A stretch of DNA of 62,890 nt, the filler included, from Octopus bimaculoides (lineage: Eukaryota): NCBI RefSeq assembly GCF_001194135.2. It is 5 parts of 5 records of this genome, joined end to end, with 100 filler letters (N's around TTAATTAATTAA, not from the genome) between each part and the next. Parts side by side here need not be neighbours in the genome. Positions count along the whole stretch, not along the records: positions 22,103 to 30,229 come from NC_068994.1; 4 more parts are not named here. The stretch is one strand, 5' to 3'. Each line of letters opens with the position of its first letter. Positions within the stretch are counted from its first letter, which is position 1. The translations under genes and the position numbers were made by a program. The notes beneath the pieces were generated by a model. The model ran no database searches and was not told the origin of the DNA. It was given only the letters and a program-made list of their open reading frames with translations. Shown here piece by piece: positions 24,977 through 28,987 of the stretch.

Positions 24977-25133
24977 ATGACGAGGATCAAATACCAGCGG
25001 TTGGGGCCGTCCCTGGATAACACTCATGCCGGACATGTAACCGCAAGGCTTCAGGATATATTACTTCTAATACTTCTACTGTTGGTCACTTTCTCCGGCC
25101 ACTCAGTGTCCGCCGAATATGATGATACGAAAG
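24977..25133 (+). CDS. First coding exon of a putative secreted or type II-anchored ADEL/DUF3011-like lectin (signal peptide exon)
   Basis: ATG at 24977; MTRIKYQRLGPSLDNTHAGHVTARLQD-ILLLILLLLVTFSG-HSVSA^EYDDTK: hydrophobic core followed by a V-S-A cleavage-type motif. Ends AAAG|GTTTGT (phase-1 donor at 25134), matching the phase of the exon at 28772. Confidence 0.7.
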
Positions 25134-25375
25134 GTTTGTATTGTTTTCCTCTAGAAATTCTTTTATATTGCATTTGTGTGTGAGTGTGTGTGTCTGCGTG
25201 TGTGTGTGTGTATGTGTGTGTGTGTATACATGTACTTGTGTAAATGTATACATACATACATACATACATACATACGAACGTGTGCATCTATATATGTATG
25301 TATGCATGTATATATACATATATGTACGCTTAAATGTGTAAGTGTATATATATTCACATACGTATATTTTTATAT

Positions 25376-25440
<65 letters not shown>

Positions 25441-25650
25441 NNNNNNNNNNNNNNNNNNNNNNNNNNNNNNNNNNNNNNNNNNNNNNNNNNNNNNNNNNNN
25501 NNNNNNNNNNNNNNNNNNNNNNNNNNNNNNNNNNNNNNNNNNNNNNNNNNNNNNNNNNNNNNNNNNNNNNNNNNNNNNNNNNNNNNNNNNNNNNNNNNNN
25601 NNNNNNNNNNNNNNNNNNNNNNNNNNNNNNNNNNNNNNNNNNNNNNNNNN

Positions 25651-25689
<39 letters not shown>

Positions 25690-25983
25690 ATATATATATA
25701 TATACATTTTTATTATTATTCTTATAATTTGGTATGCAAGTACTGTGATAGAAGCTGCGCTTCAATCATAGGAAGAATCAGCCATGAAAGAAGCTGCAAG
25801 AAAGGGAGCCCCTGATATGTTCGATTAAGTGACCTCTAAGCTAAATTGACCGTCTGCATACACGAAAAGGGCCAGTTACATAGATACTAAACAACACCAC
25901 AGAGGAATCGACGTAAGCTTAAATAATAAACCGCGATAGGTGAATCGCGATAAATTCGCGATATGCGATATGGCGAGTGATTA

Positions 25984-26018
<35 letters not shown>

Positions 26019-26029
26019 TATATATATAT

Positions 26030-26392
26030 TCTTTTATTCTGTTATTTGTTTCAATCATTTGACTGCGGCCATGCTGCAGCAGCGCCTTTAGTCGAGCAAA
26101 TCGACCCAGGACTTATTCTTTGTAAGCCTAGTACTTATTCTATCGGTCCTTTTTGCCGAACCGCTAATTTACGTGGGCGTAAACACACCAACATCGGTTG
26201 TCAAGCGTTGATGAAGGAGACACATACAGCCACACAAACATATACATACAGACACACACAAACATATATATATATATATACGACAGTTTCCATCTACCAA
26301 ATCCACTCAGAAAGACTGGTCGGCCCGAGGCTATAGTAGAAGACACTTGCCCCAGGTGTCACGCAGTGGGACTGGAACCCGGAACCTGCGCT
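26030..26392 (-). mobile_element. SINE family A copy
   Basis: Reverse-complement tail, internal (TA)/(CA)n and body. Further copies or fragments at ~7265-7410, 8640-8803, 8860-9014, 18048-18200, 27103-27260, 30640-31005, 38100-38310 and 46851-46928. Confidence 0.85.
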
Positions 26393-26463
26393 TATGAATA
26401 TTCTTTTATTTTTTACTTGTTTCAGTCATATATATTTATATATATATATTTCGGATACAATTA

Positions 26464-26509
<46 letters not shown>

Positions 26510-27259
26510 CTAATATATCAACCTGAATTCCAGTTACTTATTTATTTATTTATTTATATGTTTCTGTATTTATTCATTTATTATCTATTTACCTGTGTTT
26601 TCATTTTCGTCTTAGAATACTTTATATTTCTCTGGGACACGGCTAAATCTTTTGGGGATAATGTTATTGTTACTGTTATTAGATTCGTGATCAACAGCTT
26701 GTTAGAATCTATCATGTGTACGTACGGCTTGTATAGAACACTCGAAGGCAACAAATAACAAAGCCATAAAATTTATTAATCAATATATCAGATACACTTT
26801 GTTCCATATCAAAATTACTGCAGACATCTTAATAAGATGAGAAATGCTACACAACTCCAGATTCTATAGCAATTTACGCAACAAAGTATGCGATAAATAA
26901 ACACGCATTGGATTTGATACCTAACGGCTTGGCTTGTACCTGATGAAGAATCAGATTACACCATTGTAATTGCATTCAAACTATTTGCATTTTTCTTGAA
27001 AACGTATCTAGTACTTAACTGCATTTGTCCACTCATATCCATCTTTCTTTCTCTGCTCCAACGCGACGCATCCATTTCCAAGTAAGTTGTTATATATATA
27101 TAGGAGTGGCTGTGTGGTAAGTAGCTTGCTTACCAACCACATGGTTCCGGGTTCAGTCCCACTGCGTGGCACCTTGGGCAAGTGTCTTCTACTATAGACT
27201 TGGGCCGACCAAAGCCTTGTGAGTGGATTTGGTAGACGGAAACTGAAAGAAGCCCGTCG

Positions 27260-27291
<32 letters not shown>

Positions 27292-28771
27292 TATNNNNNN
27301 NNNNNNNNNNNNNNNNNNNNNNNNNNNNNNNNNNNNNNNNNNNNNNNNNNNNNNNNNNNNNNNNNNNNNNNNNNNNNNNNNNNNNNNNNNNNNNNNNNNN
27401 NNNNNNNNNNNNNNNNNNNNNNNNNNNNNNNNNNNNNNNNNNNNNNNNNNNNNNNNNNNNNNNNNNNNNNNNNNNNNNNNNNNNNNNNNNNNNNNNNNNN
27501 NNNNNNNNNNNNNNNNNNNNNNNNNNNNNNNNNNNNNNNNNNNNNNNNNNNNNNNNNNNNNNNNNNNNNNNNNNNNNNNNNNNNNNNNNATAGTTATTAA
27601 TATTTCTAAGTCTCTCTAAAGGAGACTACGGCAGCGGTACTGGAAATTAATAGTTATCGCCAAGCCAACATGGCAGTCCCAAAATTAGGACGAAAGCTGC
27701 CGTGAATTAGCTCCAAGAAGCCATCGCCTCTAGCTAGCTATGTGACACACGAAACCTGTGTCCTTTATAACCTTCGAACAGGGGAGGTCAGCAGTGACCC
27801 CCTGCTGGTTTGGCATCTGCAGACTAGACTAGTTTCAGGGTGTTGCCCCTTGTCAATGCAGAGTAGCCAAGCCTTAGCCAGGCGGCGCTGCTGACTATCT
27901 GCTCGAAGGTTATTTATCTAGTTATGCTTTTACAGCGAATGGTTTTGTTAAGCAGTATCGATTTTTAGAATTCTGTAAATAATAATAATAATAATGGTAT
28001 TTTATAAACTTAAAGCTTATGGCGATCACCGCGCAATGACTAAATTCTCTGCTCAACTTTCTCTGTCAGGGTCAATGCGGCGATCACACGCTACACACCT
28101 TCCTTCTAAGCACGGCTGTAAACAACAGAAGTGAGCTAGAACGTAAAAACTTAGTGTGTGCACAACATAGTTTAAGGTCAATCTGTGCGAAGCGGCTTTA
28201 CTCTGCGTGCCTTAGCCTCGTTACTATGCCAACAGTCCGGATACTTATTGATCTGACCACGTACATACAAATATCTCAACAGATCACAAGTCATATATCT
28301 TTATAGTAACTCAATTACTACTGCTGCCCCCACCCCATCACCACTATTTTAAGAGTTTCAAAACTGGAATATAAAACATGTTATGGATTTTAAATTCTCA
28401 ATCACAGAATAATGCTAATAATATAGCCTGAACAGGATAAACTACCCCTATTTTGCAGAGAAAAGTGTAGGTGGCTAGCTGTGGACTCGAACTCACATCC
28501 CCCGTGATTACGCGTCACGATGCTGTGACCGATTAAGCTAAACTACCCACTACAAATTCCTCTGCAAATTTAAGATATATAAATCTCGCATTATGAGACG
28601 CTCTCATATGTTAAATTCAAATTACGACAAACGTAAATAAACGAACGAAGTTTGCTTTTAGAAGCGTTGAGATGTCTTAGAAAGTTAAAGAAGTGATTTT
28701 AATGGATATTTTTATACTAATTTTTTAATATTATTATTTTAAAATGACATTTGTATTTCTCCCTAAAACAG

Positions 28772-28987
28772 GATGTCAAGTTAAAATTCAAAAAGCATCA
28801 TCTTCTGAAAACCAGCCATTTGAGGCACAAGCCACCAGGGGTTATGTTATTAACTCCTTGAAAGTAATTAAGCAAATTTCTTCGCAAGAATGCGTCCCCA
28901 ATGTAATGTATGGTTACACGCTCACATCATGGTGGGTGAAAAAGGGATGCGTTGCAAAGTTTAAAATAGAAGAATGTGATATTGCCG
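28772..28987 (+). CDS. Internal exon encoding one ADEL (Aplysia egg lectin)/DUF3011-like domain
   Basis: Acceptor TTTGTATTTCTCCCTAAAACAG| with an upstream CTAAT branch-like motif; donor G|GTAAGT at 28988; 216 nt, phase 1/1. Translation (G)CQVKIQKASSSENQPFEAQATRGYVINSLKVIKQISSQECVPNVMYGYTLTSWWVKKGCVAKFKIEECDIA has the C...YV(L/I)N..V..Q.S...C.....(F/Y)GY.....WV..GC.A.FK..C pattern I recall for ADEL repeats. Confidence 0.75.

What the first reader, a model, noticed from the sequence alone, without database searches (positions are those of the whole stretch)
24977..28987. Spliced gene for a secreted ADEL/DUF3011-like lectin, hidden from the ORF track
Seen: a signal-peptide exon (phase-1 donor) joins in frame to a symmetric phase 1-1 exon with canonical splice sites, giving ...SVSA^EYDDTK-G-CQVKIQK...YVINSLKVIKQISSQECVPNVMYGY...WWVKKGCVAKFKIEEC with four Cys. 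Established: Aplysia egg lectins (ADEL/AKL) are galactose-binding tandem repeats related to the mostly bacterial DUF3011 family and unlike classical animal lectin folds. Inference: this is a cephalopod member, one domain per shuffle-compatible exon, possibly acting in egg, mucus or microbial recognition. The long 27-aa n-region allows a type II membrane anchor instead. Further domain exons may lie in the N gaps.
Basis: partly seen in the sequence, partly recalled or inferred. Interest (0 to 1): 0.8.

Follow-up and report, generated by a model that had tools for sequence, protein, structure and literature searches.

The report
Octopus DUF3011 lectin-like surface protein gene
The two exons are real and are the first two exons of an Octopus bimaculoides gene already in the databases (LOC106874738, "uncharacterized"). 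It encodes a relative of sea-hare egg lectins, but the whole protein has two such domains plus a stalk and a probable membrane (GPI) anchor, so it is a correct but fairly ordinary find.

Summary
Exon 1 (24977-25133, ATG, phase-1 donor) and exon 2 (28772-28987, 216 nt, phase 1-1) have canonical splice sites. Their join reproduces residues 1-124 of two public Octopus bimaculoides models: UniProt A0A0L8GTL6 (231 aa) and RefSeq LOC106874738 (307 aa). Both N gaps lie inside intron 1, so reading frame across them is not an issue.

Exon 2 is a DUF3011 domain:
- Pfam scores 29.8 bits against a cut-off of 25.
- An exhaustive search matches Aplysia "lectin ADEL-like" at E=1e-13.
- It carries the family's invariant residues and the molluscan four-cysteine pattern.
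- AlphaFold gives pLDDT 96, all beta, with no significant match among solved structures.

The same exon plan occurs in Argonauta hians and in a third, unidentified cephalopod-like genomic contig. A related intronless transcript contig carries the same domain order.

- The gene is not unannotated.
- The further domain exon lies about 5.3 kb downstream, outside the piece, not in the N gaps.
- The full protein ends in a roughly 90-residue stalk and a C-terminal hydrophobic tail. It is therefore probably surface-tethered (GPI) rather than a free secreted lectin.

Sugar binding is inferred only. This is a new member of a known kind, of modest interest.

The parts
24977..25133 (+). Exon 1: start codon, 27-residue n-region, hydrophobic core ILLLILLLLVTF, predicted cleavage VSA|EY, and the first base of the Gly53 codon (phase-1 donor AAG|GTTTGT)
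   Evidence: Identical to residues 1-52 of A0A0L8GTL6 and LOC106874738. The Argonauta exon ends at the same codon position. Residues 17-53 are about 50% identical to the Argonauta sequence.
24977..25114 (+). Predicted signal peptide (residues 1-46). The (-3,-1) residues V-x-A are matched by V-x-G in Argonauta and I-x-A in P0170.
   Evidence: Hydropathy peak at residues 21-46 and alignment A5. No dedicated predictor was available, so cleavage is inferred.
25134..28771 (+). Intron 1 (3638 nt as assembled). It contains both N gaps (25441-25650, 27295-27589), microsatellites and SINE-like repeat copies.
   Evidence: The gaps are unchanged in the v2 assembly. tblastn finds no DUF3011-like coding sequence in the intron.
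28772..28987 (+). Exon 2 (216 nt, phase 1-1): one complete DUF3011 domain (D1), residues 53-125 of the protein, with Cys at protein positions 54, 93, 112 and 121
   Evidence: The orthologous exon is also 216 nt in Argonauta and in contig L002.
28840..28962 (+). Core of the Pfam PF11218 match (protein residues 76-116), containing the family-invariant S..x..C ... G-C-x-x-x-F motif
   Evidence: 29.8 bits, cut-off 25. Invariant columns C40, C59 and F63, and near-invariant S36 and G58, in 60- and 82-sequence alignments.
28988..30229 (+). Start of intron 2, made of low-complexity GTT/ATT-type repeats. The piece ends in an assembly gap. Exon 3 (second DUF3011 domain) and exon 4 (stalk plus hydrophobic tail) lie beyond it, at L003 12330-12557 and 15381-15703.

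Best explanation
The window holds exons 1 and 2 of Octopus bimaculoides gene LOC106874738, a four-exon gene.

Shown: the product (307 aa) consists of an N-terminal signal sequence, two tandem DUF3011 domains each on its own phase 1-1 exon, a roughly 90-residue polar stalk, and a C-terminal hydrophobic tail of about 20 residues. The DUF3011 domain is a small six-stranded all-beta, disulfide-containing module. It is homologous to the repeats of the Aplysia galacturonic-acid/galactose-binding egg lectins (AKL/ADEL) and to the mainly bacterial DUF3011 family.

Inferred: the signal peptide is cleaved after VSA. The C-terminal tail is replaced by a GPI anchor near the A-N-S-S site. The two domains are thereby held on a flexible, probably glycosylated stalk at the outer cell surface, where they bind a carbohydrate ligand. 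On this reading it is a tethered lectin-like receptor or adhesion molecule, not a free egg lectin.
For: Gene structure:
- The splice join is identical to two public models, and the spliced CDS from L003 translates exactly to the 307-aa protein.
- Argonauta hians and the genomic contig L002 have the same intron positions and phases around the domain exons.
- The intronless contig L004 from run SRR29271460 encodes signal region, D1, D2, stalk and hydrophobic tail in the same order.

Family:
- Pfam PF11218 scores 28-30 bits against a cut-off of 25.
- The exhaustive phmmer search gave 369 hits. They include 'lectin ADEL-like [Aplysia californica]' at E=1e-13, 'D-galacturonic acid binding lectin [Plakobranchus]' at 4.5e-33 and 'capsulin [Elysia]'.
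- All family-invariant residues are present.
- The cysteine pattern (first, third, fourth, plus one after GCxxxF) is shared with 11 other proteins among the 163 proteins on file (the top 150 hits plus cluster members). Every named one is a mollusc.
- The gastropod+bivalve profile scores 52 bits against 40 bits for the bacterial profile.

Constraint: non-synonymous difference to Argonauta is 0.27, while synonymous sites are saturated.

Fold: AlphaFold2 gives mean pLDDT 96.1 with six beta strands.

Anchor: there are only two hydrophobic stretches, at residues 21-46 and at the extreme C-terminus. The stalk is 27% Ser/Thr/Pro and 28% charged. A C-terminal hydrophobic tail preceded by small residues (ANSS, GNGGSS, ANSGKANS) is kept in all three orthologues although its sequence is not conserved.

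Lectin precedent: AKL is built of three DUF3011 repeats and binds galacturonic acid (PMC5484111).
Against: - Carbohydrate binding has been shown only for Aplysia proteins, which are 20-27% identical to this domain. No ligand-binding residues are known for the family, so binding-site conservation cannot be checked.
- No signal-peptide or GPI predictor was available. The n-region is unusually long (27 aa here, about 64 aa in Argonauta), which could favour an uncleaved anchor.
- In P0170 the C-terminal hydrophobic run is short (about 11 residues) and is followed by 10 polar residues.
- No expression data exist for the octopus gene itself. The two public octopus models differ on whether exon 3 is included.
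Confidence: 0.65

Rival explanations
1. The product is a freely secreted soluble lectin like AKL/ADEL. It would be released into egg coats or mucus, either directly or by shedding.
For: It has an N-terminal signal-like sequence and is homologous to secreted Aplysia egg lectins (PMC5484111). GPI proteins can be shed (general knowledge).
Against: Both octopus models and both orthologues end in a hydrophobic tail after a long stalk. AKL consists only of a signal peptide and three repeats.
Confidence: 0.12
2. The N-terminal hydrophobic segment is an uncleaved signal anchor. The protein is then type II, or is held at both ends, rather than GPI-anchored with a free N-terminus.
For: The n-region is long, at 27 residues here and about 64 in Argonauta when read from the upstream in-frame ATG.
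Against: Small residues sit at -1 and V/I at -3 before a polar stretch in all three orthologues (VSA|E, VSG|Q, IYA|E). The hydrophobic core is only about 12 residues, which is short for a membrane span. P0170 has an internal Met that would give a normal short n-region.
Confidence: 0.1
3. The DUF3011 domains here do not bind sugars. Instead they act as structural or adhesive modules, for example in matrix or capsule assembly like gastropod 'capsulin', or they bind a protein ligand.
For: Some of the strongest hits after the cephalopod proteins are very long multi-repeat sacoglossan proteins, one of them named capsulin. Aplysia capsulin is described as an egg-capsule protein (PMC4500399). The function of bacterial members is unknown.
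Against: The only biochemically characterised members are lectins. Two domains on a stalk is a typical receptor layout (inference).
Confidence: 0.2
4. The feature is an artefact: a chance ORF pair, a pseudogene, or bacterial contamination of the assembly.
For: DUF3011 is mostly bacterial. The locus is full of gaps and repeats.
Against: It has spliceosomal introns at positions conserved in three genomic loci, lies among octopus interspersed repeats, carries the mollusc-type cysteine pattern, has intact reading frames, and shows fewer non-synonymous than synonymous changes.
Confidence: 0.01

Closest known systems
Aplysia egg lectins AKL / ADEL (galacturonic acid / galactose binding, DUF3011 repeats)
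   Same: The domain family and repeat length (about 72 aa) are the same. The cysteine pattern matches (Cys at the start, S-x3-C, G-C-x3-F, then a Cys just after). Both have an N-terminal signal sequence and tandem domains.
   Different: Identity is only about 20-27%. The octopus protein has two domains rather than three, plus a roughly 90-residue stalk and a C-terminal hydrophobic (GPI-like) tail that AKL lacks. Sugar binding and egg or albumen-gland expression are untested here.
Sacoglossan 'D-galacturonic acid binding lectin' and 'capsulin' multi-repeat proteins (Plakobranchus, Elysia)
   Same: These are strong named hits (E 4.5e-33 to 1e-11, summed over many repeats). They have the same mollusc-type cysteine pattern and Thr/Pro-rich linkers between domains.
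   Different: They carry 10-25 repeats in proteins of 900-2300 aa, and no terminal hydrophobic tail is seen in the sequences read. Their names are automatic annotations, not tested functions.
Bacterial DUF3011 (PF11218) proteins
   Same: They share the conserved core ...S-x3-C-x(14-17)-W/F-V-x2-G-C-x-A-x-F and are secreted tandem-repeat proteins.
   Different: Their repeats have a Cys pair near the N-terminus and no Cys after the GCxAxF motif: 148 of the 163 proteins on file show this pattern. They have no introns, and their function is unknown.
Resistin / PCSK9 C-terminal-domain type small beta sandwiches
   Same: These are among the top, non-significant, Foldseek neighbours of the model (TM 0.44-0.51).
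   Different: E-values are about 1 or worse and probability is below 0.5. There is no sequence relation, so this is not evidence of kinship.

Membership tests
DUF3011 (Pfam PF11218) | Score at or above the Pfam gathering cut-off (25 bits) | tested here: met
   Exon 2 alone scores 29.8 bits, the spliced exons 1+2 score 28.4 bits, and the 231-aa model scores 27.1 bits.
DUF3011 (Pfam PF11218) | Conserved core residues of the repeat (Ser, Cys, Gly-Cys, Phe) | tested here: met
   Columns C40, C59 and F63 are invariant, and S36 and G58 are at least 90% conserved, in 60- and 82-sequence alignments. The octopus domain has all of them.
DUF3011 (Pfam PF11218) | Tandem repetition of the roughly 70-aa unit | tested here: met
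   The full gene has two adjacent units. The second lies on exon 3, outside the piece.
Mollusc-type DUF3011 lectin-like proteins | Cysteine pattern with a Cys just after GCxxxF and no second N-terminal Cys | tested here: met
   Twelve of the 163 proteins on file show it, including the octopus protein. Every named one is a mollusc: Aplysia, Plakobranchus, Elysia, Candidula, Solemya, Argonauta and Octopus.
AKL/ADEL egg lectins | Significant sequence similarity to an ADEL/AKL-type protein | tested here: met
   P0033 'lectin ADEL-like [Aplysia californica]' matches at E=1.0e-13 across four matched stretches.
AKL/ADEL egg lectins | Architecture: signal peptide followed only by three repeats, soluble | tested here: not met
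   The octopus protein has two repeats, a stalk and a C-terminal hydrophobic tail. The AKL architecture is taken from PMC5484111.
AKL/ADEL egg lectins | Binding of galacturonic acid or galactose | not testable with these tools
   This needs recombinant protein and a sugar-inhibition or glycan-array assay.
AKL/ADEL egg lectins | Expression in a female accessory gland or the egg mass | not testable with these tools
   No expression data were reachable. The tissue of the only transcript contig found (SRR29271460) is unknown.
GPI-anchored surface proteins | Hydrophobic segment at the extreme C-terminus, preceded by small residues, with no cytoplasmic tail | tested here: met
   The sequence ...HEANSSPALLITTLLLVVALGIHTLL-COOH has a Kyte-Doolittle peak at 209-231 of the 231-aa model. 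The feature is kept in Argonauta and, less cleanly, in P0170.
GPI-anchored surface proteins | Cleavable N-terminal signal peptide | tested here: inconclusive
   A hydrophobic core and conserved (-3,-1) residues are present, but the n-region is long and no predictor was available.

The most novel reading that the evidence does not exclude
Cephalopods keep a conserved, membrane-tethered (GPI) two-domain form of a lectin family otherwise known only as soluble gastropod egg lectins and bacterial secreted proteins. It would act as a cell-surface glycan receptor, for example for microbial or egg-coat uronic-acid polymers. Its slowly evolving D2 (83% identity between Octopus and Argonauta) and fast-evolving D1 (56%) would have divided roles. 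Presence in gastropods, bivalves and cephalopods would date the family, possibly of bacterial origin, to before the split of the molluscan classes.
Probability: 0.3. Interest if true: 0.5.

Novelty: new member of a known kind. Interest (0 to 1): 0.3.

Why it matters
The finding extends the DUF3011 / Aplysia egg-lectin family to cephalopods. It also shows a surface-tethered architecture there, which no paper in the searchable library describes: only four papers mention DUF3011, and none concerns cephalopods. It gives a concrete candidate for a new type of animal cell-surface lectin whose fold has no solved relative. The gene itself is already annotated, however, and its function remains an inference, so the gain is incremental.

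Tried and rejected
- PDB sequence search with exon 2 returned only designed pentatricopeptide repeats. Their whole-sequence scores come from summing eight insignificant stretches, so the match is spurious.
- PDB profile search found nothing better than E=0.1, a ribosomal protein L24.
- Foldseek against PDB gave no match with E below 0.9.
- The first word-index homologue search found nothing. This was a false negative, because the later profile search found the RefSeq protein.
- tblastn for a second DUF3011 exon within the piece found none.
- Look-ups of contigs encoding A0A0L8GTL6 or the 86-aa read-through ORF returned nothing on record.
- ARAGORN found no tRNA.
- Rfam at E<=0.1 gave only microRNA and snoRNA families far below their gathering scores, all on the TG/CA microsatellite at about 25114-25440. 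These were rejected as low-complexity matches.
- blastn of the piece against the Argonauta and L002 loci found only low-complexity matches.
- Literature searches for the accession, the LOC number and the SRA run returned nothing relevant. The 'shellome' paper was irrelevant.
- Bacterial contamination was considered and rejected, as set out under the rival explanations.
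Full report
**1. What is in the sequence**

The piece (22103-30229) is AT-rich animal DNA, full of microsatellites and interspersed repeats.

- Exon 1 is 24977-25133 (157 nt). It starts at an ATG that has an in-frame TAA 9 nt upstream, and ends at AAG|GTTTGT in phase 1.
- Exon 2 is 28772-28987 (216 nt). It follows ...CTAAAACAG| and ends at CCG|GTAAGT, so it is a symmetric phase 1-1 exon.
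- The join reads MTRIKYQRLGPSLDNTHAGHVTARLQDILLLILLLLVTFSGHSVSAEYDDTKG-CQVKIQK...KFKIEECDIA, with four Cys in exon 2.

Both ORFs appear separately in a plain 40-aa ORF list.

**2. The gaps**

Both N runs (25441-25650 and 27295-27589) lie inside intron 1, so no reading frame has to cross them. The first sits between (AC)n and (TATC)n microsatellites. The second follows a (TA)n run and is followed by unique sequence.

The chromosome-level assembly GCA_001194135.2 carries the same sequence with the same gaps (window coordinate = L003 coordinate + 21976). The piece itself is bounded by further N runs. Physical continuity and true intron length therefore remain unverified.

Three observations make a hidden coding exon in the gaps unlikely:
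- The public octopus protein models join exon 1 directly to exon 2.
- The gap-free orthologous intron of Argonauta hians (5088 nt) contains no domain-like coding sequence.
- An intronless contig (L004, run SRR29271460), read here as an assembled transcript, joins the signal region directly to domain 1.

**3. The gene is already annotated**

An exhaustive phmmer search of exon 2 against 1.84 billion representative proteins gave 369 hits at E<=1e-3. The top hit, 100% identical, is UniProt A0A0L8GTL6_OCTBM, 'Uncharacterized protein', Octopus bimaculoides, 231 aa.

A profile search then found RefSeq 'uncharacterized protein LOC106874738 [Octopus bimaculoides]', 307 aa. On locus L003 its exons are:
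- 3001-3157 (window exon 1)
- 6796-7011 (window exon 2)
- 12330-12557 (228 nt, phase 1-1)
- 15381-15703

The spliced CDS translates exactly to the 307-aa protein. The 231-aa UniProt model is the same gene without exon 3.

Exons 3 and 4 lie beyond the end of the piece. tblastn finds nothing like them inside it.

**4. Family assignment**

- Pfam PF11218 (DUF3011) matches exon 2 at 29.8 bits against a gathering cut-off of 25.
- Named hits in the exhaustive search include 'lectin ADEL-like [Aplysia californica]' (E=1e-13), two 'D-galacturonic acid binding lectin [Plakobranchus ocellatus]' proteins (4.5e-33 and 1.9e-12), 'capsulin [Elysia marginata]' (8.8e-22), a Solemya velum protein, and 'DUF3011 domain-containing protein [Acidobacteriota]'.
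- In alignments of 60 and 82 single repeats, the invariant columns (Cys40, Cys59, Phe63 of the domain) and the near-invariant Ser36 and Gly58 are all present in the octopus domain.
- Among the 163 proteins on file (the top 150 hits plus cluster members), 148 show the bacterial cysteine pattern, with two N-terminal Cys and none after GCxAxF. Twelve show the alternative pattern, with one N-terminal Cys and one Cys just after the motif. The octopus domain is among the twelve, and every named one is a mollusc.
- A profile built from gastropod and bivalve repeats scores the octopus domain at 52 bits, against 40 bits for a profile of bacterial repeats.
- The background claim that AKL consists of three DUF3011-like repeats and binds galacturonic acid is confirmed by PMC5484111. 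Galactose binding of AKL-40 is confirmed by PMC8306185.

**5. Conservation of the gene plan**

Three other loci were compared.
- Argonauta hians (GAB1604251.1, locus L001) has exon 1 ending at the same ...K-G codon split, a 216-nt D1 exon, a 228-nt D2 exon and a stalk exon. All junctions are in phase 1.
- A genomic contig of unknown origin (L002, from an ENA metagenome assembly) has a 216-nt D1 exon and a D2 exon 8.4 kb apart, with the same phases.
- The intronless contig L004 encodes the same order of parts.

Identity between Octopus and Argonauta, by region:

| Region | Identity |
|---|---|
| Signal region | 37% |
| D1 | 56% |
| D2 | 83% |
| Stalk | 44% |
| C-terminal tail | 50% |

For D1, the non-synonymous difference is 0.27 while synonymous sites are saturated. 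This fits purifying selection but does not allow a ratio.

**6. Structure**

AlphaFold2 with the 82-repeat alignment gives mean pLDDT 96.1 and pTM 0.80. The model has six beta strands and no helix.

No solved structure is related:
- By sequence, the single-sequence and profile searches found nothing credible.
- By fold, the best Foldseek E-value is 0.95, with TM about 0.4-0.5 to resistin, the PCSK9 C-terminal domain and phage fibre domains. None of these is significant.

The model coordinates could not be read out, so the disulfide pairing is an inference. The invariant pair Cys93-Cys112 (protein numbering) is one likely bond. Cys54-Cys121 is the other, because the first and last strands carry them and both residues are specific to the mollusc type.

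**7. Rest of the protein and likely mode of action**

After D2 comes a stalk of about 90 residues with 27% Ser/Thr/Pro, 28% charged and few hydrophobic residues. The protein then ends ...HEANSSPALLITTLLLVVALGIHTLL.

The only hydrophobic stretches are the N-terminal one and this extreme C-terminal one. A terminal hydrophobic run preceded by small residues is kept in Argonauta (GNGGSSNLRLLTTTGVLVVVISLATLALL). It is kept less cleanly in P0170, although the sequence itself is poorly conserved.

From general knowledge of protein sorting, this layout (signal peptide, ectodomain, Ser/Thr-rich stalk, terminal hydrophobic tail with no cytoplasmic residues) is the signature of GPI-anchored proteins.

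I therefore favour a surface-tethered, lectin-like receptor or adhesion protein. My rough sub-confidences are:
- The window holds exons 1-2 of this gene: above 0.95.
- DUF3011 membership: about 0.95.
- Membrane tethering: about 0.7.
- GPI specifically: about 0.55.
- Carbohydrate binding: about 0.5.

The long n-region keeps the uncleaved-anchor alternative alive. It is 27 residues here and about 64 in Argonauta when read from the in-frame ATG at L001 9932. Against that alternative, the conserved V/I-x-A/G residues before a polar stretch argue for cleavage.

**8. Comparison with known systems, and novelty**

The domain belongs to DUF3011 and, within it, to the mollusc-type group that contains the Aplysia lectins. 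The protein is not an AKL/ADEL-type lectin in architecture, and its activity is untested.

Only four papers in the library mention DUF3011, and none deals with cephalopods. One lectin survey uses PF11218 as a lectin marker and finds none in rotifers.

The gene is thus a new, undescribed member of a known family with a variant (tethered) architecture. It is already present in RefSeq and UniProt with the Pfam domain precomputed.

**9. Verdict**

It is wrong or unproven on 'hidden', 'secreted' and 'exons in the gaps'. Interest is modest.

Noticed in passing
L003 12330-12557 (outside the piece; would be window 34306-34533): The UniProt model A0A0L8GTL6 (231 aa) omits the second DUF3011 exon that the RefSeq model LOC106874738 (307 aa) includes. 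The exon is phase 1-1, so skipping keeps the frame. This is either an annotation error or a real alternative isoform.
   Followed up: partly
Alignment A5; L003, L001 and L004: Between Octopus and Argonauta, domain 2 is much better conserved (83%) than domain 1 (56%), the domain encoded in the window. D2 also carries an N-glycosylation sequon (NET/NES) in all three aligned proteins (P0169, P0003, P0170) and in the translated D2 exon of contig L002.
   Followed up: partly
window 23073-23378, 26317-26393, 27092-27258: Copies of one SINE-like interspersed repeat (81-92% identical) occur in both orientations upstream of the gene and inside intron 1. They include a 132-nt inverted pair at 23247-23378 / 27094-27225 that is 90% complementary.
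   Followed up: partly
window 24964-24971: A TATA-like TATTTAAA lies only 6-13 nt upstream of the start ATG and contains the in-frame stop TAA. That is too close to serve as the TATA box of a transcript that includes this ATG. The real promoter or 5' UTR, possibly an upstream non-coding exon, is not defined.
   Followed up: no
L001 9932-10202 (Argonauta hians): The Argonauta model is 5'-partial. An in-frame ATG 23 codons upstream gives MSRSSLIRQ..., which resembles the octopus MTRIKYQRL. That gives an n-region of about 64 residues, swollen by a Ser/Thr-rich stretch encoded by CAT/CAC-type repeats.
   Followed up: partly
window 28463-28545, minus strand: By eye this stretch resembles a tRNA, with a GTTCGAGTCC-like T-arm. 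Neither ARAGORN nor the Rfam tRNA model (E<=0.1) reports it. It is probably a decayed tRNA-derived repeat.
   Followed up: partly
window 22862-23077, 24223-24439, 29379-29580: There are very long perfect or near-perfect microsatellites: (AATAT)43, (ACA)n(ACT)n of about 220 nt, and (ATT)67. A long GTT/GCT-rich low-complexity tract fills the start of intron 2.
   Followed up: no
L001 22637-28419, minus strand: In Argonauta the next gene downstream, on the opposite strand, is a rhodopsin-type 7TM receptor (PF00001). Whether the same neighbour exists in Octopus was not checked.
   Followed up: no
L002 (ENA ERZ21867824 contig) and L004 (Logan SRR29271460): A genomic contig in a metagenome assembly and an intronless contig from a sequencing run encode closely related orthologues of this gene. 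They are 42-48% identical to octopus D1. The source organism, presumably another cephalopod, was not identified.
   Followed up: partly
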